Shown here: piece after piece, positions 13,178 to 47,256 of the stretch
Position numbering within the stretch: position 1 is the stretch's first letter
How the letters are laid out: every line of letters starts with the position of its first letter
IMG/VR virus record: IMGVR_UViG_3300003877_000001
Coordinates: 186,001 to 250,000 of that record
Reading direction: 5' to 3' (one strand)
DNA length: 64,000 nt
Position numbers and translations under genes: made by a program
The notes under the pieces: generated by a model
Seen by the model: the letters and a program-made list of their open reading frames with translations, nothing else
What the model was told of the DNA's origin: nothing
Database searches by the model: none

Positions 13178-13202
13178 AAATATTATCTAGTGCGATCTAC
13201 CC

Positions 13203-13232
13203 AACCCCTTGCAGTTAATTTTGTAAGGGGTT
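13203..13232. terminator. Hairpin at end of the + strand gene block
   Basis: AACCCCTTGCA...TGTAAGGGGTT. Confidence 0.55.
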
Positions 13233-13382
13233 CTATTTGTCTACAATGTCCAACCTCATGATCACAATGTACATCATATTGTCCATGATAACATAGGATA
13301 GTCTTAACATTTCATTAACGAATCAATTCGTACCATATTGTATCATTATTAACACATTATTCTCCGCTAATGAAAAAACCCA

Positions 13383-14167
13383 TAGGACATCCTACGGGTT
13401 TAATCATTCCAAACATGCAAGTACGTTTTCGTACAATACAAACATACAAATAAAAAAAGTCATAAGCAAGAGAAGATGGGATTATTATTTTTAACTAAGA
13501 ATGTTAATACTCGTTGCTTACGACTAAGAGTGGACACCTAAAAATAAATACCCACACATTTCAAAACAATCTTAATTAAGGATATTGCTAGGGACATTGA
13601 TGTCCCGAACACCACATTGTCCAATCCATTAGACAACCCACATTGTACACTCTCATAGGATAGCCTACATAGTAATTGCAATAACTATCATAGCAACCAG
13701 TGCTATATAAATTATTGCTTTTCCATAGGATGTCCTAATTTTAGTTCATCATATATAATACATATCCCATACCAAAAACGTAACTCGTTGTTCCTATGGA
13801 ACTTAACTTTAGGATGTCCTAAGTAATTCCCATTATTGGAAGTTCTTTGTCCCATAATGGGACAAGACATGACGAATTTCATGGTCTTAAATTATTAGAG
13901 AATCGGCTTCGGGCATTTCTACCCTTTGTTGAGAAGCAAGTAAATTATTATGTTTATTTAGGTTATCCTAGCCTGACATTTTTAATTAAGAATATATAAT
14001 TTTTTATAAAATCGAGTTTGAAATTTTATAAAAGAGATTTTTAGTACATGTAGCGACCCAAAAGTGGGTGAAAGTGGTAGGATGTGTTTAATTGTGGTGT
14101 AGAATTAAAAATTTTATGTTATTTTGTTGTTTTATTTATATTTAAATACTCTTTTTAGGATGTCCTA
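13383..14167. repeat. Cluster of TAGGA-NN-(T/G)CCTA palindromes in a non-coding region
   Basis: Copies at 13383, 13656, 13726, 13810, 13959 (variant), 14156; also 11495 and 12589 overlapping TAG stop codons. Confidence 0.8.
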
Positions 14168-14270
14168 AAAGGAACAAAACAAAGGTGTTTTTAATAAAAA
14201 TGGAACATGAAAGAACCATAAAAGTACTACTTCATTTCTACATTAGTAGTTGTTAGGTCAGGGTAATTTA

Positions 14271-14919: not shown

Positions 14920-16515
14920 TCAAGAGTTTATATATTTATTTTTAATATTAATTGCAGCATTAAAATCTGCATTATCTTCATGACCACATTTAGTACATTT
15001 AAAATTTGATTGATTAGTTCTATTATTAGAATCTATATTACCACAAACAGAACAAGTTTGTGAAGTATATGCAGGATCAATAAGAATTACTTCTTTACCA
15101 AGTTCTTTAGCTTTATATTCTAATTGGGTTTTAATTGTATTCCAACCAATATCTAGTATAACTCTATTAAAGTTCTGTTTAGATTTACTACCTTTAATAG
15201 TCATATTTTTTATATTAAGGTCTTCAAGAACAAAAGTATTATTATTTTTATTTTTGGTAAGTGTTGAAGTTATATTATGTTGTTTATTATTTCTAATATT
15301 AGAAATTTTAGTATTTATTATACCTAATTTATGTTTTATTCTTTTATATGAATTAGTTAAATAAAAATCTATATCTGTTTTATTTTTTTTATAATAGTCA
15401 TATTTTTTATTAAGTATAGTAGATAGTTTTCTTTTTTCTTCAGCATATTTTAATAGAACATCAAATCTATTTGCAAATATTGGATTATTAAAATCATTAA
15501 TATTTGAAGTTGTTATAGGTCTTTCAACACCTAAATCAATTCCAATGGTTGTTTTATCATTAGTGTGTTTAATTGAATAATTTTCAATATTGGTAATTAC
15601 CTGTATAGATATGAAGTATTGATCTTGCGAATTTTTAGATATAGTATAAGAATTTAATTTAAAAACATTAACATCATTCCACATATTAATAAACAATTTA
15701 TTATGACAAACCATTTTAATTTTTTTTAATTTAGGAATATTAATAGTAACGAATTTACTACCATTACTTATTATTTTAAATGGGGAAATATTACCATTAT
15801 AATTATATAGTATTTGACCAGTAAAAGAGTATGTTGAATTTCTATTTTTAAATTTAGGATAACCTGAATGTGTTTTCCATATTTTAGTAAAAGCATTATC
15901 TAAATTTTGTAATGTATATGATCTAGTAGTAGCATCAACATTTTTTAAGAATCCATATTTAAGGATACCATTTTCATTAAGTTCATTAGAGTTAGCCAAT
16001 ACAGTTAGTTCTTTAGATGCTTTATATTTATTAAAATATAAATCATTATCTTTCATATATTTTCTTCTAGCAACACCAATATCCTTAATTAAAGATTTAT
16101 AGTAGAGCATATGATCTATATCACCAGACTCATTAATATATTTAAAGAAAGAAACAATAAGAGTATCTTCAGTATCTAATTCTATTTTATATTTTTTTAA
16201 ATAGTTGTTAAACTCTTTAGAATCATTTAAATACTTATTTGTAAATTCATCTGAAATATCTTGTTGTTGTCTTAGAAAAGTATTATAGATAAAATTAGAG
16301 GTTCTAACAGCATCATCAAAGTATTGTATTTGTTTTTTATTAGGATAAATCCTAAACTTCAAAGCCTTATTTATTTTTTTTAGTTTAAATGATTTAATAT
16401 CATCTAATATAATATTATCATTTGTTAGAGAAGTTCCAATACCCTTTTTATTTACTTTGATAATATTGTGTATTGTGTTATTTTGTAAAGTAACAATATC
16501 ATTAGGTTGTAGCAT
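14920..16515 (-). CDS. tnpB: CRISPR-associated TnpB/Cas12f-like RNA-guided nuclease (531 aa)
   Basis: KALKFRIYPN (HTH_OrfB), GYPKFK, RuvC-I IGIDLG, RuvC-II VLEDL, Zn finger CSVC...CTKC, RuvC-III NADFNAAINI. Confidence 0.9.
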   Translation of the reverse strand: MLQPNDIVTLQNNTIHNIIKVNKKGIGTSLTNDNIILDDIKSFKLKKINKALKFRIYPNKKQIQYFDDAVRTSNFIYNTFLRQQQDISDEFTNKYLNDSKEFNNYLKKYKIELDTEDTLIVSFFKYINESGDIDHMLYYKSLIKDIGVARRKYMKDNDLYFNKYKASKELTVLANSNELNENGILKYGFLKNVDATTRSYTLQNLDNAFTKIWKTHSGYPKFKNRNSTYSFTGQILYNYNGNISPFKIISNGSKFVTINIPKLKKIKMVCHNKLFINMWNDVNVFKLNSYTISKNSQDQYFISIQVITNIENYSIKHTNDKTTIGIDLGVERPITTSNINDFNNPIFANRFDVLLKYAEEKRKLSTILNKKYDYYKKNKTDIDFYLTNSYKRIKHKLGIINTKISNIRNNKQHNITSTLTKNKNNNTFVLEDLNIKNMTIKGSKSKQNFNRVILDIGWNTIKTQLEYKAKELGKEVILIDPAYTSQTCSVCGNIDSNNRTNQSNFKCTKCGHEDNADFNAAINIKNKYINS

Positions 16516-21010: not shown

Positions 21011-21649
21011 TTATTTAATTAATAGTTTATTTTGTTCTTGTAATTTTTCTAGACCTAGAACATTTACTTTATGCATGATTGCATTTTCAACTTCTTTTTT
21101 AGCATCTAGTACAACATCATCCATTGTTTCTTGAAATGTTTTCATAAAGAATGGTATATTACTTTTAACTTCTTGGCTAATTTTTTGTATAATAAATTTT
21201 AGTTCTTCTTGATCAGCTTTAGAAAGAGTTTTCTTCTTAACAAGTTCTTGTGCTCTTTTTTTACCATTAGTAAGTTCATTAGCAAACTCATTCATTCTAT
21301 CTTTCATTTTACGATGAACAAATTCTTTTTGACTTTCGGTTTTATCAATAGGTTCTACTTGTTTACCATCAACAAATTGTAAGGTACAAGGAACACCTGA
21401 ACCCATATTTATTGAGGTTATTAATTCACTAAATTGATTAGAGGTCATACGAAGTTGTAGAATCCTTTTCTTTGGAAAGTAATAATCTGAACTTAATGAT
21501 TTTTCATGTTCAGATTCACTAACTGTCATTGTGATGTAGTTACCTTGTTTAAGTTCACTACCATAAAATTCATCACCAACATTAGAAGATGTTCTAGTAA
21601 ATTCTATCTGTCCATAAGCAGGATGTTTGTATTTTTCTTTGTCTTTCAT
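21011..21649 (-). CDS. Conserved hypothetical phage protein
   Basis: HPAYGQI...FYGS...GVPCTL motifs; coiled-coil C-terminus. Confidence 0.75.
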   Translation of the reverse strand: MKDKEKYKHPAYGQIEFTRTSSNVGDEFYGSELKQGNYITMTVSESEHEKSLSSDYYFPKKRILQLRMTSNQFSELITSINMGSGVPCTLQFVDGKQVEPIDKTESQKEFVHRKMKDRMNEFANELTNGKKRAQELVKKKTLSKADQEELKFIIQKISQEVKSNIPFFMKTFQETMDDVVLDAKKEVENAIMHKVNVLGLEKLQEQNKLLIK

Positions 21650-33344: not shown

Positions 33345-33501
33345 AATTTTATTTTATACAATAATAAACATTAATTTTCAAATATGATAGTATAATCTTT
33401 ACAAACTTGCAAAAAAATACCACCCATACATAATAATTCCACCTGCAATAAGGAATATTACCATTTCTATAAATTTCTTTCTACTCATAATTATAAATAC
33501 T

Positions 33502-33545
33502 AAAAAAAAGGGGAGTGATTATGGGCAATCAAACCCTCTCCCCTT
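33502..33545 (-). terminator. Intrinsic terminator closing the large non-coding transcript
   Basis: Minus strand AAGGGGAG...CTCCCCTT followed by a U run. Confidence 0.75.
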
Positions 33546-34905
33546 ACCATTGCTGTCGTCACTTTCCCCTACAAAGAATCGTGTAAGATTCACCATCACC
33601 ATTTAATCTATAATTAAACCGCAATGTCAAAGGCGAATTTTCAGTTGGTTTTCTCGTCTTTAATATTTTAAGTGGAAACCGATAAGTACCTGACTTAGCA
33701 GTTTTCCACTAACACTTTGATTTTTCGGTAGCAGCATCACAGCGTTCCTACGTAGTCGTCTGTTTACCCCCTCAGTCTTATGTGTCCAAGTGACTGACTT
33801 CTTTAATGTCCTGCAAAGGGATTACCTTAATATCCTCATACCCACTCAGCGTGAGCAACTACTTTTCTAGCAAGGTAGTAGATTGCATACTAGATTTTTA
33901 ATATTTTAGAGAGTCAGTTCACCACCACTGACATAAAAGTGACCTAAAAGGCATTAAGCCGTATCACCTGCATATTTGTTAAGGGCATATGATCTCCGTA
34001 ACAGGTATTTTATGCTTTCTCTAATTTTTTAATATTCGCACCCTAGAAATGATAACCATGAGTTGACATTATTACTACTCATTCCTATATGGGTGACTGA
34101 CAGTTATTGTCGAGTATCATAGACCCTTCTGTTGCTAGGTGATATGGTTACACCCCATCATGCATTTAAGCAATATTTTAAAAATCTTTGTCCAAATTTC
34201 AGTGGAATATAATCTAGAGTTTGGCTTATTCCTGTTAATTCAGGGTTATACTCCACCTCTCGGAGTCCTCACATATATATCTACAATAAACCACTGCTGA
34301 TACAGTACAAACACAATCTCTTTTTTAAAGGAGTTGATTATCTAAACATTTCTCCTTGGTTATACCTTTATCGTACTTCGTTAACATTTCCACTGGCTTT
34401 CAACTATATCATCAACTTTCAAGACTATGACGGTTTATAAATAACCCATATATAGTCTAACCCTGAGTATTAATTGGTAGGTATCAGTAGAGGTTTAAGT
34501 TCGCATCTCATTTTATATCCTATTACCACTTTGTGGCTAGGCTGTCTAATGTTAATATACTAGCATGGTGCACCATATATTAGATAAGAATTCATGGCAG
34601 AATAACTAATGCTTTTTCCTGTATTGTCACGTTAACAATCATATATAGGTTTCAGTCCTACTATTATCTCGCTAAACAAATCAGTTATTCCCCTTACGTT
34701 ATCCTCTCTTAATATTTCAAAGACAGTTCCCATATCAGTTTGCCATTTATTTTAAATTTAATCGGAAAGTGTCTACCCTCAAACTTGCTTACTCTTGAGT
34801 AGTGTTACGATCATGCCTAGTACTGCAAAGTTATCCGTCTAGACTACGCTCCCACGCTAATGGCAACTTTCCTTGTTTTTTCAATATTTTTAAGAACGTT
34901 TTTCT
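33502..34905 (-). ncRNA. Candidate large structured ncRNA or ncRNA cluster (~1.4 kb)
   Basis: No ORF in track, GC-richer than flanks, many paired stems, upstream promoter at 34912 and terminator at 33502. Confidence 0.65.
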
Positions 34906-34941
34906 TATATACAAATATACGTTAAAATAAGTCTTTCATAA

Positions 34942-36189: not shown

Positions 36190-36858
36190 TTATTTCTCTT
36201 TTAATAAATACTTATTTGAAATAATTTTGAAACTAAAAGAACCATCCATAGCACGATATACAACACCTTCTCTTAGTGTATCATACAGTTCTGATCTACC
36301 ATCAGCATCTTTTAATAAGAAGTCGAAATCATCAGACAATGATACGTTCACATCTAAAACAGGAACAGTTTCTAATTCTAATTCATTAATAATTTCAATG
36401 AATTCATTATAATTAAGTCTCTTATTTTTACCATCTTGTGCAGTAAAGAACCTAATAGTCTTTTCTTTAAGATTATAGATATTACCTTGAATAGATGTTC
36501 CAATTAATTCACCTTGAAGAACTAAATCCTTATCATGTTTAGCACACCATGCTCTCATTTTCTCTTCCAACTTCATATTTCTTGCTGTTGTAACAAATTT
36601 GTTTTCAGATTGAACAAGTTTATTTGTGGTTAATGTATCTGGAACTTCTATTAATAATTTCAATTCAAGATTGCGTGAAGACACACCATAATCCCAAGTA
36701 GAATCAACATTATCCTGTTTAACACAATGTAAGGTAATTGATGAATTATGAACCAAAATATTATTTGCAAAAAAACAATTAGTATCCTCTACTTCTATAT
36801 CATATAAAAGTGAATCATTTTCAATCTCTTCAATTTTACTTATTTTTAACCGTTTCAT
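36190..36858 (-). CDS. Split-intein C-half (38 aa) fused to C-terminal part of RNA ligase
   Basis: MKRLKISKIE...YDIEVED...FFANNILVHN/S, then ligase motifs SSRN, LQGELIG, EGVV, FKIISNKYL. Confidence 0.9.
   Translation of the reverse strand: MKRLKISKIEEIENDSLLYDIEVEDTNCFFANNILVHNSSITLHCVKQDNVDSTWDYGVSSRNLELKLLIEVPDTLTTNKLVQSENKFVTTARNMKLEEKMRAWCAKHDKDLVLQGELIGTSIQGNIYNLKEKTIRFFTAQDGKNKRLNYNEFIEIINELELETVPVLDVNVSLSDDFDFLLKDADGRSELYDTLREGVVYRAMDGSFSFKIISNKYLLKEK
36745..36858 (-). mobile_element. IntC of naturally split intein
   Basis: Blocks F/G ending His-Asn, with Ser+1. Confidence 0.9.
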
Positions 36859-36947
36859 TTAATTTTTCTTTAAATAATTTATATATTGATTTATTTTTAT
36901 TATATTTAATATGATATTGTGGTATAAACTCAAAAGTTGGAAAAAAA

Positions 36948-37727
36948 CTATTCTTTTAATATGAAATCTTTTGTTGTTAATTCATCAGTTCTTCTATAAC
37001 AATTTAATTCTGGAAGCCAAACCATATGATTTCCAGTTAATTTAATTATTGTTCCATCTGATAATGTAAGTTTAAACCATTTTTTCTTTCCTCTTTTTGT
37101 TATTGAATGATTCTTTATCTTTTTATAACAAATTTCGTTTTTTACAATGTTATATGATTTAACATTTAATTCTAATTTTTTTTCACAAATATCTTTAATA
37201 GTTACGTTACCAATATCAGTATTAATTATAGTCTCTTCATCTAAACAACCTTCAAGTTTTTCAGACCTATACACTAATTTTTCTTTCCATTCTGGTAATT
37301 TATCAACCAAATTTTGGATTCTTTCCTCGCCACTTTTAGTACAGAAAGTTGGAAATCTACTTTTAGCACTCATATCTTCAGGAACGGGCGGTTCATATTT
37401 ATACACACCAATAGCTTCTGTTAAATCAGTATCTAATAACAAATTTAAAGGTAACATAAGTCCCTGACTTACAGTCCCTCTCAACTTAATTGTACGGATT
37501 CTAAGGAATCCCCTATCAATATCTTTTTGATTCTTGAATAGGTGATTAGACCAATCTTTATGTGGTATCATTGAGTCTATTTCAAAATAAATTCCCCATT
37601 CCCCTTCTTGGAATTCATCCTTTTTAACGACACATTCCCATCCATCTACTGTCGCTTTTTCGATTTTATCAGCATTAGGAATTGGCGTTAATTTACTTAC
37701 TTTTCTTAATGTTACTAATTTTCTCAT
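36948..37727 (-). CDS. N-terminal part of DRB0094-family RNA ligase fused to split-intein N-half (99 aa)
   Basis: IPNADKIE...GWECVVKK...YFEIDS, LRGTVSQGL, motif I EKLEG, then intein CLDEET...LTGNH. Confidence 0.9.
   Translation of the reverse strand: MRKLVTLRKVSKLTPIPNADKIEKATVDGWECVVKKDEFQEGEWGIYFEIDSMIPHKDWSNHLFKNQKDIDRGFLRIRTIKLRGTVSQGLMLPLNLLLDTDLTEAIGVYKYEPPVPEDMSAKSRFPTFCTKSGEERIQNLVDKLPEWKEKLVYRSEKLEGCLDEETIINTDIGNVTIKDICEKKLELNVKSYNIVKNEICYKKIKNHSITKRGKKKWFKLTLSDGTIIKLTGNHMVWLPELNCYRRTDELTTKDFILKE
36951..37247 (-). mobile_element. IntN of naturally split intein
   Basis: Block A Cys1 (codon 37247-37245) and block B TxxH (TGNH). Confidence 0.9.
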
Positions 37728-46969: not shown

Positions 46970-47256
46970 ATTTTCTATTTAAATAAATTTTACTTTCAAA
47001 ATATATGTGATCCAATACTTTATTGGCATTTTTACCTTGAAGGAACTACCATTATATAAATGTATCATACTACAATATACGTTTAGGATATCCTAAAGGT
47101 TACAAAACAACTTTTAATATTTTACTTCCATTAGAATTTAGACTTAAATCAAATTCTTTATAAATTCCATTCATTAAGATAAGCCAACAAAGGATCATTA
47201 ATATTTAAAATATCATCACAATTTTTTATTGGTTTAATGTATAAAGGAGATTCCAT

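What the first reader, a model, noticed from the sequence alone, without database searches (positions are those of the whole stretch)
33502..34919. ~1.4-kb ORF-free, highly structured transcription unit: candidate giant ncRNA
Seen: the ORF track has nothing here, in an otherwise densely coding genome. The region is visibly GC-richer and is bounded by a host-type promoter (34912-34919, minus) and an intrinsic terminator (33502-33545). Paired stems: AGTGGAAAC/GTTTTCCACT (33671/33701), TCAGTC/GACTGA (33772/33792), GTCAGT/ACTGAC (33913/33927), GTGGA/TCCAC (34202/34252). GGAAAGT/ACTTTCC (34764/34866) crosses TTGCCATT/AATGGCAA (34740/34859) in pseudoknot order. Known: phages carry large ornate RNAs (GOLLD, ROOL) of about 0.6-0.8 kb. 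I could not match this to those, to tRNA, tmRNA, RNase P or self-splicing introns by eye. Inference: an unclassified large RNA or a polycistron of several RNAs.
Basis: partly seen in the sequence, partly recalled or inferred. Interest (0 to 1): 0.82.

Follow-up and report, generated by a model that had tools for sequence, protein, structure and literature searches.

The report
Phage operon of novel structured RNAs
The 1.4-kb gene-free stretch is a real, conserved non-coding RNA locus of a jumbo phage of Bacteroidota: a host-type promoter and a ribosomal-RNA-style anti-termination box drive a string of about nine separately folding RNAs that match no described family and whose function is unknown.

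Summary
The ORF-free region (window 33502-34941, minus strand) is real and is not a decayed or recoded gene. All six frames carry all three stop codons, and no Pfam, Rfam or tRNA match was found. Ten related phage contigs carry a 1.1-2.7 kb ORF-free array at the same place, between a lipoprotein-like gene and a 95-aa gene, near an RNA ligase and a 2H phosphoesterase.

The array is a collinear string of modules (M1-M7) that are present, absent or duplicated as whole units. The modules are 79-95% identical between phages whose flanking proteins are about 75% identical. Base pairs covary strongly in M2 (17 of 39 pairs) and M3 (11 of 40), and more modestly in M1, M4, M5, M5b and M6.

The unit starts with a Bacteroidota -7 promoter box followed by a leader that matches boxA. 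The same element sits upstream of 16S and 23S rRNA in Bacteroidota, and ahead of tRNA islands and GOLLD RNAs in their phages. It ends in a conserved intrinsic terminator.

The best reading is a phage stable-RNA operon of several new RNA families, not one giant RNA. Function is unknown and expression is untested.

The parts
34912..34919 (-). Bacteroidota-type -7 promoter box TATATTTG (TAnnTTTG)
   Evidence: Read directly. Conserved in L038, L057, L059, L061 and L062. The same box lies 15-25 nt ahead of the same leader in other Bacteroidota phage and host loci.
34880..34900 (-). boxA-like leader (AACGTTCTTAAAAATATTGAA); its core GTTCTTAAAAA matches the boxA consensus at 10 of 11 positions
   Evidence: Conserved in all full arrays. 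The element sits in the Bacteroidota rrn leader and the 16S-23S spacer, and in phage tRNA/GOLLD islands. Consensus GYTCTTTAANA is from PMC5725501.
34760..34877 (-). Module M1, about 115 nt, a four-way junction closed by GGAAAGU/ACUUUCC
   Evidence: 94% identical in L061 and L052. Consensus fold has 35 pairs, 100% paired, with one compensatory pair from only 3 sequences.
34592..34748 (-). Module M2, a 157-nt structured RNA and the best-supported family
   Evidence: Ten copies in nine contigs, including the non-syntenic jumbo phage L064. 39 pairs, 96% paired, 17 with changes on both sides; 0 of 500 shuffles reach this, and slid controls give 2-5.
34342..34591 (-). Module M3, about 250 nt, a structured RNA ending in a hairpin
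   Evidence: Seven copies. 40 pairs, 97.5% paired, 11 with changes on both sides against 0-3 in slid controls.
34177..34341 (-). Segment U, unique to this phage (no homolog in the relatives)
   Evidence: No homolog covers positions 590-733 of the minus-strand region, window 34209-34352. Only a single-sequence fold is available.
34035..34176 (-). Module M4, about 140 nt
   Evidence: Six copies, 79-94% identical. 22 pairs, 95% paired, 3 compensatory.
33902..34034 (-). Module M5, about 125 nt, cloverleaf-like (a 7-bp closing helix and three arms)
   Evidence: Five copies, 87-100% identical. 34 pairs, 97% paired, 2 compensatory. Single-sequence fold.
33807..33901 (-). Module M5b, about 90 nt
   Evidence: Four full-length copies aligned, 76-78% identical to the window. 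23 pairs, 97% paired, 2 compensatory.
33670..33806 (-). Module M6, a 137-nt sRNA-like unit: two hairpins, an invariant 17-nt loop and its own terminal hairpin
   Evidence: Nine copies, including the tandem paralog M6b in L061 and a copy in L059. 5 of 19 pairs are compensatory. The terminal hairpin comes in three variants; a U tract follows it in the relatives, but only UU in the window.
33557..33669 (-). Segment M7; only its first ~35 nt are conserved
33502..33556 (-). Conserved 3' block with the intrinsic terminator (hairpin 33510-33543, U8 at 33502-33509)
   Evidence: The inner stem GAUU/AAUC changes to GACU/AGUC in L039.

Best explanation
This is a phage stable-RNA operon. Host RNA polymerase starts at a Bacteroidota-type promoter (TATATTTG). 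About 12 nt later the transcript carries a boxA-like leader, the element that in ribosomal RNA operons recruits NusB/NusE and the other Nus factors. That makes the polymerase resistant to Rho and lets it run through roughly 1.4 kb of untranslated, folded RNA to a strong intrinsic terminator. The transcript is a string of about nine modules of 90-250 nt. Each folds on its own and most are closed by their own terminal helix. AU-rich linkers of the form AAUAUUNAAR separate many of them. I infer that the precursor is cut at or near these linkers into separate stable small RNAs, as tRNA and rRNA precursors are. Shown here: there is no coding potential; the locus is conserved and syntenic in ten relatives; the modules are gained, lost and duplicated as units; base pairs covary on the minus strand; and the leader is identical to the Bacteroidota rrn and tRNA-island element. 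Inferred: transcription, Nus-dependent anti-termination and cleavage at the linkers. Function is unknown. My best guess is that the RNAs are infection-stage accessory RNAs that fill the place tRNAs and GOLLD occupy in other Bacteroidota phages.
For: Not coding. No known RNA family or tRNA. Syntenic ORF-free arrays of 1.1-2.7 kb occur in L038, L039, L052, L056, L057, L059, L060, L061 and L062. Module order is collinear, with whole-module presence or absence and a 1,034-nt tandem duplication in L057. Modules are 79-95% identical in DNA, while the flanking proteins are 56-85% identical and the flanking genes about 75% identical in DNA. Covariation: M2, M3, M4 and M5, M5b and M1, M6. Many G-U pairs fix the strand. 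M6 has its own terminal hairpin and tandem paralogs. The boxA leader is shared with rrn leaders, 16S-23S spacers, and phage tRNA and GOLLD islands; the consensus is. Linker motifs fall at module borders, 4 in 1.45 kb against 30 in 128 kb of both strands. A leader ending in the same linker motif precedes even the first module, which argues that the linker is not itself a promoter.
Against: There are no expression data of any kind. Folding-energy z-scores are ordinary. The alignments hold only 3-10 related sequences, so support for M1, M4, M5 and M5b is thin, and segments U and M7 have none. The window's boxA departs from the consensus at position 7 (T to A). The window itself has only one promoter-like site, and its M6 hairpin is followed by only UU, so in this particular phage the product could stay one long RNA. 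Cleavage at the linkers rests on position alone. Not every border carries the motif (M2/M3, for example, does not).
Confidence: 0.6

Rival explanations
1. It is one giant multi-domain RNA of about 1.4 kb that works as a single molecule, like GOLLD or ROOL, with optional peripheral domains. The modules are domains, not separate RNAs.
For: The window has one promoter plus boxA and one strong terminator. Module order is fixed across relatives. GOLLD also has a variable 5' part and a linker, and sits behind the same leader in other Bacteroidota phages.
Against: No helix linking different modules was found. Each module closes on itself. Any module can be missing. M6 carries its own terminator hairpin plus U tract in relatives and is duplicated in tandem. 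Four relatives have a second promoter-like motif plus boxA inside the array.
Confidence: 0.22
2. It is a descendant of a tRNA island. The modules are tRNA-derived or tRNA-mimicking RNAs that act as decoys or substrates for host RNA-cutting defences, and the neighbouring RNA ligase and 2H phosphoesterase serve them.
For: The same promoter-plus-boxA leader drives tRNA clusters in other Bacteroidota phages. M1 and M5 fold as four-way junctions; M5's connector lengths (2, 1, 5 and 0 nt) are those of a tRNA cloverleaf. In L064, M2 follows elements that carry a tRNA-type T-loop and acceptor stem. An RNA ligase and a 2H phosphoesterase flank the array in the relatives.
Against: ARAGORN and the Rfam tRNA model find nothing, even at E up to 10. 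The window's modules have no T-loop or D-loop signatures. M2, M3 and M6 are not cloverleaves.
Confidence: 0.1
3. It is a DNA-level or cis-regulatory element: an origin, a packaging site, or a long untranslated region of a neighbouring gene.
For: It lies between genes on the same strand. It contains short palindromes (for example ATGGTGCACCAT in M3; CTACGTAG in the M6 loop).
Against: Covariation keeps pairing through G-U wobble pairs, which only work in RNA of one strand. A terminator separates it from the downstream genes. The upstream gene is complete. There are no iterons or tandem repeats.
Confidence: 0.04
4. It is a decayed or stop-codon-recoded protein gene.
For: None beyond the absence of an ORF.
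Against: All three stop codons occur in all six frames. The ten longest stop-free pieces (36-75 aa) have no significant Pfam match. The apparent ORF in M6 has 1-nt indels, and an in-frame stop in L038. The DNA is more conserved than the neighbouring genes.
Confidence: 0.02

Closest known systems
GOLLD RNA (Rfam RF02032) and ROOL RNA
   Same: Both are large, ornate, phage-borne non-coding RNAs of unknown function, often near tRNA islands; GOLLD has a less conserved 5' part and a linker. In Bacteroidota phages L185 and L201, GOLLD sits downstream of a leader element matching the one used here (in L203 the element lies after the GOLLD copy).
   Different: There is no Rfam match to either family, even at E up to 10, although the same tool finds GOLLD at 160-277 bits in the other loci. 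No sequence is shared beyond the leader. Here there are many short self-closed modules that vary as units, not one 400-800-nt fold.
Ribosomal RNA operon leader and spacer with boxA (NusB/NusE anti-termination)
   Same: The leader core GTTCTT(T/A)AAAA matches the consensus GYTCTTTAANA. It lies just after the promoter of an untranslated operon. A matching element (same search pattern) lies upstream of 16S and of 23S in Bacteroidota genomes.
   Different: It drives neither rRNA nor tRNA here. The window's copy has A instead of T at position 7. Binding and anti-termination are untested.
Phage tRNA islands, and the T4 tRNA cluster with its two small stable RNAs (from my own knowledge of T4)
   Same: A polycistronic, untranslated cluster of small stable RNAs in a large T4-like phage (rIIA/rIIB genes). 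Related phages use the same leader for tRNAs.
   Different: No tRNA is detectable here. The modules are new folds and the array is 1.1-2.7 kb.

Membership tests
rrn-type boxA anti-termination element | Sequence match to the consensus GYTCTTTAANA | tested here: met
   The window has GTTCTTAAAAA, 10 of 11 (T7 to A). L057 has GTTCTTTAAAA, 11 of 11. Consensus from PMC5725501.
rrn-type boxA anti-termination element | Position in the promoter-proximal leader of an untranslated stable-RNA operon, and the same element in the rrn leader and the 16S-23S spacer of the host phylum | tested here: met
   About 12 nt after TATATTTG in the window. Upstream of 16S in L065; between the spacer tRNAs and 23S in L069 and L103 (L117: after the spacer tRNAs); ahead of tRNAs in L121, L185, L186 and L206.
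rrn-type boxA anti-termination element | Binds NusB-NusE and confers Rho-resistant elongation | not testable with these tools
   Needs biochemistry or genetics.
GOLLD RNA (RF02032) | Match to the covariance model at or above 150 bits | tested here: not met
   No hit at the gathering score or at E up to 10. Positive controls L185, L201 and L203 score 160-277 bits.
ROOL RNA | Match to the Rfam covariance model | tested here: not met
   No hit.
tRNA / tmRNA | Cloverleaf with T-loop and D-loop signatures, detected by ARAGORN or Rfam RF00005 | tested here: not met
   relatives.
Bacteroidota primary-sigma promoter | -7 box TAnnTTTG | tested here: met
   TATATTTG at 34919-34912.
Bacteroidota primary-sigma promoter | -33 box TTTG about 20 nt upstream, and a mapped start site | tested here: inconclusive
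   No TTTG at the expected distance. The start site cannot be mapped here.
Intrinsic terminator | G+C-rich hairpin followed by a U tract | tested here: met
   Hairpin 33510-33543 plus U8, conserved with a compensatory change. It was not called by the simple scan, which allows loops of 3-8 nt only.
Conserved structured RNA (general) | Base pairs kept through compensatory changes beyond controls | tested here: met
   M2: 17 pairs against 5.1 +/- 1.5 in shuffles and 2-5 in slid controls. M3: 11 against 0-3.
Protein-coding gene, standard or recoded | An open frame under some stop-codon reassignment, or homology of fragments to a protein family | tested here: not met

The most novel reading that the evidence does not exclude
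The array is a new kind of phage RNA toolkit that has replaced tRNAs in a tRNA-island-type operon. The precursor is cut at the conserved AAUAUUNAAR linkers. The pieces are healed, sealed or circularised by the RNA ligase and 2H phosphoesterase that flank the array in the relatives where those flanks were recovered. The products act as decoys or sponges for host RNA-targeting defences, or assemble into RNA-only complexes through self-complementary loops (CUACGUAG in M6, ACAUGU in M6b). A sharper variant concerns M6: its invariant loop UAGGAACG is complementary to the boxA core CGUUCUUA, so M6 might titrate or mask boxA and so tune Nus-dependent transcription.
Probability: 0.08. Interest if true: 0.9.

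Novelty: new variant of a known kind. Interest (0 to 1): 0.68.

Why it matters
Large structured RNAs of phages, such as GOLLD and ROOL, are among the least understood RNAs in biology. This locus adds at least two, and probably six or seven, RNA folds that have comparative support and are absent from Rfam 15. They are packed into one operon of a 326-kb phage.

It also shows how such RNAs are expressed in Bacteroidota phages: a host promoter plus a ribosomal-type boxA leader. The same leader was found ahead of tRNA islands and GOLLD. That gives a simple sequence handle (TAnnTTTG, then boxA, then no ORF) for finding more such RNAs.

It also makes a testable prediction: that phages borrow the host's rRNA anti-termination machinery for their own non-coding RNAs.

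Tried and rejected
- **Stop-codon recoding:** rejected. All three stop codons occur in every frame.
- **Decayed gene:** the ten longest stop-free pieces give nothing significant in Pfam.
- **Known RNA families:** Rfam at gathering and at E up to 10, ARAGORN, and the promoter/terminator scan give nothing useful.
- **Tandem or CRISPR-like repeats:** none. The CRISPR-DR35 hit at E = 0.11 is a single copy and looks like chance.
- **Folding-energy z-scores:** uninformative.
- **GenBank phages:** no match.
- **33 IMG/VR loci with the lipoprotein-like gene:** none has a homologous array.
- **Exact-word scans:** a 17-mer from M6 gave only a chance hit in IMG/VR, and one true homolog (L052) among 14 metagenome hits. 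The M2 pattern found nothing in 185,579 bacterial and archaeal genomes.
- **M6 as a 46-codon ORF:** rejected because of 1-nt indels and a stop in relatives.
- **AATATTNAAR linker as a general phage promoter:** rejected. It is not placed upstream of genes elsewhere in the window.
- **GGCAAU/AUUGCC pairing as a pseudoknot in the terminator block:** not kept in L039.
- **Shared sequence with GOLLD-bearing loci:** only the leader is shared.

Full report
**What the window is.** It is part of IMG/VR contig 3300003877_000001, a 325,854-bp phage genome. It carries rIIA/rIIB, baseplate and tail-fibre genes and has 27.9% G+C. Genes around the finding run on the minus strand.

**The observation.** Positions 33545-34941 form the only long stretch of the window without an ORF of at least 45 aa. 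JGI's own gene calls leave it empty. All six frames contain TAA, TAG and TGA many times, so no stop-codon reassignment opens a frame. The ten longest stop-free pieces have no significant Pfam match. G+C is 35.5%. Rfam 15 gives no hit at gathering scores in the whole window and nothing credible at E up to 10 in the region. ARAGORN finds no tRNA or tmRNA. Folding-energy z-scores of 200-nt windows are ordinary on both strands, so thermodynamics alone would not have flagged this region.

**Relatives.**
- GenBank phages have nothing similar.
- The upstream 89-aa gene is common in large phages, but 33 IMG/VR loci that carry it have no homologous non-coding stretch.
- The downstream 95-aa gene has only two homologs in the 5.8-billion-protein set. 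Their contigs (L038, L039) have an ORF-free stretch in the same place.
- An exact word from the most conserved block found L052.
- Close homologs of the 89-aa protein led to L056, L057, L059, L060, L061 and L062.
- All of these carry 1.1-2.7 kb without ORFs between the lipoprotein-like gene and the 95-aa or 51-aa genes. Depending on how far each contig reaches, an RNA ligase lies a few genes upstream and a 2H phosphoesterase a few genes downstream.

**Anatomy.** Coordinates p count along the minus strand; the window coordinate is 34942 - p. The array divides into these parts:

| Part | p |
|---|---|
| P (promoter and leader) | 20-64 |
| M1 | 65-182 |
| M2 | 183-349 |
| M3 | 350-600 |
| U (unique segment) | to 765 |
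| M4 | 766-907 |
| M5 | 908-1040 |
| M5b | 1041-1135 |
| M6 | 1136-1272 |
| M7 | 1273-1385 |
| Terminator block | 1386-1441 |

- The order is the same in every relative, but whole modules are missing or added. L057 has a 1,034-nt tandem duplication that contains M2 and M3.
- Modules are 79-95% identical in DNA between contigs whose flanking proteins are 56-85% identical and whose flanking genes are about 75% identical in DNA.
- Many borders carry an AU-rich motif, (A)ATATTNAAR. There are four copies in this 1.45 kb against 30 in the 128 kb of both strands of the window.

**Structure.**
- **M2** is the clearest case. Nine sequences give 39 consensus pairs, 96% of cells paired, and 17 pairs with changes on both sides. 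Shuffles give 5.1 +/- 1.5 and slid controls give 2-5. The distant copy in L064 replaces both the closing helix and the 12-bp long-range helix with different, still complementary sequences.
- The pairing uses many G-U pairs. On the other strand these would be A-C mismatches, so the RNA is the minus strand.
- A covariance model of M2 (R1) finds only these copies in 408 kb of fetched loci.
- **M3:** 40 pairs, 97.5% paired, 11 compensatory against 0-3 in slid controls.
- **M4, M5, M5b and M1:** 22-35 pairs, 95-100% paired, 1-3 compensatory pairs each, from only 3-6 sequences.
- **M6:** two hairpins, 5 of 19 pairs compensatory, and an invariant 17-nt loop. It ends in a hairpin that exists in three different versions; a U tract follows it in the relatives. 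It occurs as a paralog (M6b) in L059 and in tandem with M6 in L061.
- M6 is not a small gene, despite a 46-codon frame in the window. Relatives have 1-nt indels, and L038 has an in-frame stop.

Four of the six listed stems coincide with these supported helices. The proposed pseudoknot does not hold, because its 3' arm is the 5' strand of the M2 closing helix.

About 12 nt later lies a 21-nt leader that is conserved in all the full arrays. Most are in Bacteroidota, several per genome, and often at contig ends. It also gave 25 hits in IMG/VR.

Reading the contexts and running Rfam on eleven of them shows the following:
- The element lies upstream of 16S rRNA (L065).
- It lies between the spacer tRNAs and 23S rRNA (L069, L103); in L117 it follows the spacer tRNAs, but the locus ends before 23S.
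- It lies ahead of tRNA genes (L121).
- In phage contigs it lies between tRNAs and ahead of GOLLD RNAs (L185, L186, L201, L206).

Its core, GTTCTT(T/A)AAAA, fits the boxA consensus GYTCTTTAANA (PMC5725501). Leader and spacer are the two classical positions of boxA in rrn operons. I therefore read the leader as a boxA anti-termination site. The window's copy differs from the consensus at one position.

Four relatives have a second boxA inside the array, preceded by a motif (GTAACC, about 17 nt, ACGTATAAG). In the window this motif stands directly before the start codon of at least seven genes.

The 3' end is a conserved hairpin plus U8, with one compensatory change.

**Interpretation.** The simplest account of all this is a stable-RNA operon. 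It has a host promoter, a boxA-dependent processive polymerase, a polycistronic precursor of independently folding RNAs and a terminator.

I infer that the linkers are processing sites, for two reasons. They mark the module borders. Even the first module is preceded by a leader ending in the same motif, which a promoter element would not need. This step is not shown.

The one-giant-RNA reading remains possible for this particular phage, which has a single promoter and a weak internal M6 terminator. Several points argue against it: the self-closure of the modules, their independent loss, the internal terminators and second boxA in relatives, and the lack of any inter-module helix.

**Comparison with known families.** This is not GOLLD, ROOL, tRNA or any other Rfam family. 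The same Rfam search does find GOLLD at 160-277 bits in other loci that share the leader, and nothing but the leader is shared with those loci.

In genomic role it resembles GOLLD and ROOL, which are phage RNAs of unknown function near tRNA islands. From my own knowledge, it also resembles the T4 tRNA cluster with its two small stable RNAs.

In L064, a 353-kb phage that is not syntenic with the window, M2 directly follows elements with tRNA-type T-loops and acceptor stems. This strengthens the link with tRNA islands.

**Limits.** There are no expression data. The sequence sets are small and related. Segments U and M7 have no comparative support. The host is only inferred to be Bacteroidota, from the promoter type, the leader, and protein relatives in Cellulophaga and Tenacibaculum phages. 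Function is unknown.

Noticed in passing
window 36190-37727 (minus): The RNA ligase gene is in two ORFs. ORF 36948-37727 is the ligase N part plus an intein-N-like tail. ORF 36190-36858 is a ~35-aa intein C-end plus the ligase C part. They are 89 nt apart and the second has its own ATG. Relatives have one intact 343-354-aa ligase. This looks like a naturally split intein, or a broken one.
   Followed up: partly
window, upstream of minus-strand genes starting at 21649, 25093, 26997, 28531, 32542, 44942 and 45791; also near 47121: A recurrent motif stands directly before the start codon: GTAACC(T)TT, a short palindrome such as TAGGATATCCTA, then ACGTATAAG. It is probably a phage promoter or operator with almost no leader. 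The same motif precedes the second boxA inside the arrays of L038, L056, L059 and L061.
   Followed up: partly
window 33400-33489 (minus): A conserved 29-aa hydrophobic mini-ORF (MSRKKFIEMV...) lies right after the array terminator. It is not in the ORF list at 30 aa and is conserved in L038 and L039.
   Followed up: partly
window 14920-16515 (minus), with 13178-14249: A 531-aa IS605/TnpB-type transposase-like ORF (phrog_506), with an ORF-poor stretch nearby. Rfam finds no guide-RNA family there.
   Followed up: no
L064:3214-3393 and L064:4384-5480: Rfam finds a tRNA match (40 bits) with a ~105-nt insertion in the variable region. Three further elements of 110-225 nt have canonical T-loops and acceptor stems, one of them with encoded CCA; neither ARAGORN nor Rfam calls them. 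An M2 copy follows directly.
   Followed up: partly
L185:769-1185, L201:879-1294, L203:333-747: GOLLD RNAs in Bacteroidota-type phage contigs sit close to the same boxA leader: downstream of it in L185 (between tRNAs) and in L201 (behind a TAnnTTTG box), and upstream of it in L203. So boxA-led expression may be general for large phage RNAs in this phylum.
   Followed up: partly
window 33742-33758 (M6 loop) and 34880-34900 (boxA): The invariant M6 loop contains UAGGAACG, complementary over 8 bp (one G-U) to the window's boxA core CGUUCUUA. It also contains the palindrome CUACGUAG. The paralog M6b has a different palindrome (ACAUGU) and no boxA complementarity. This was noticed post hoc; I estimate the chance of such a match at about 0.02.
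   Followed up: no
L038:3407-3988, L057:732-1313, L062:321-902, L063:431-1015: Several relatives have an extra 193-194-aa gene between the lipoprotein-like gene and the array. The window lacks it.
   Followed up: no
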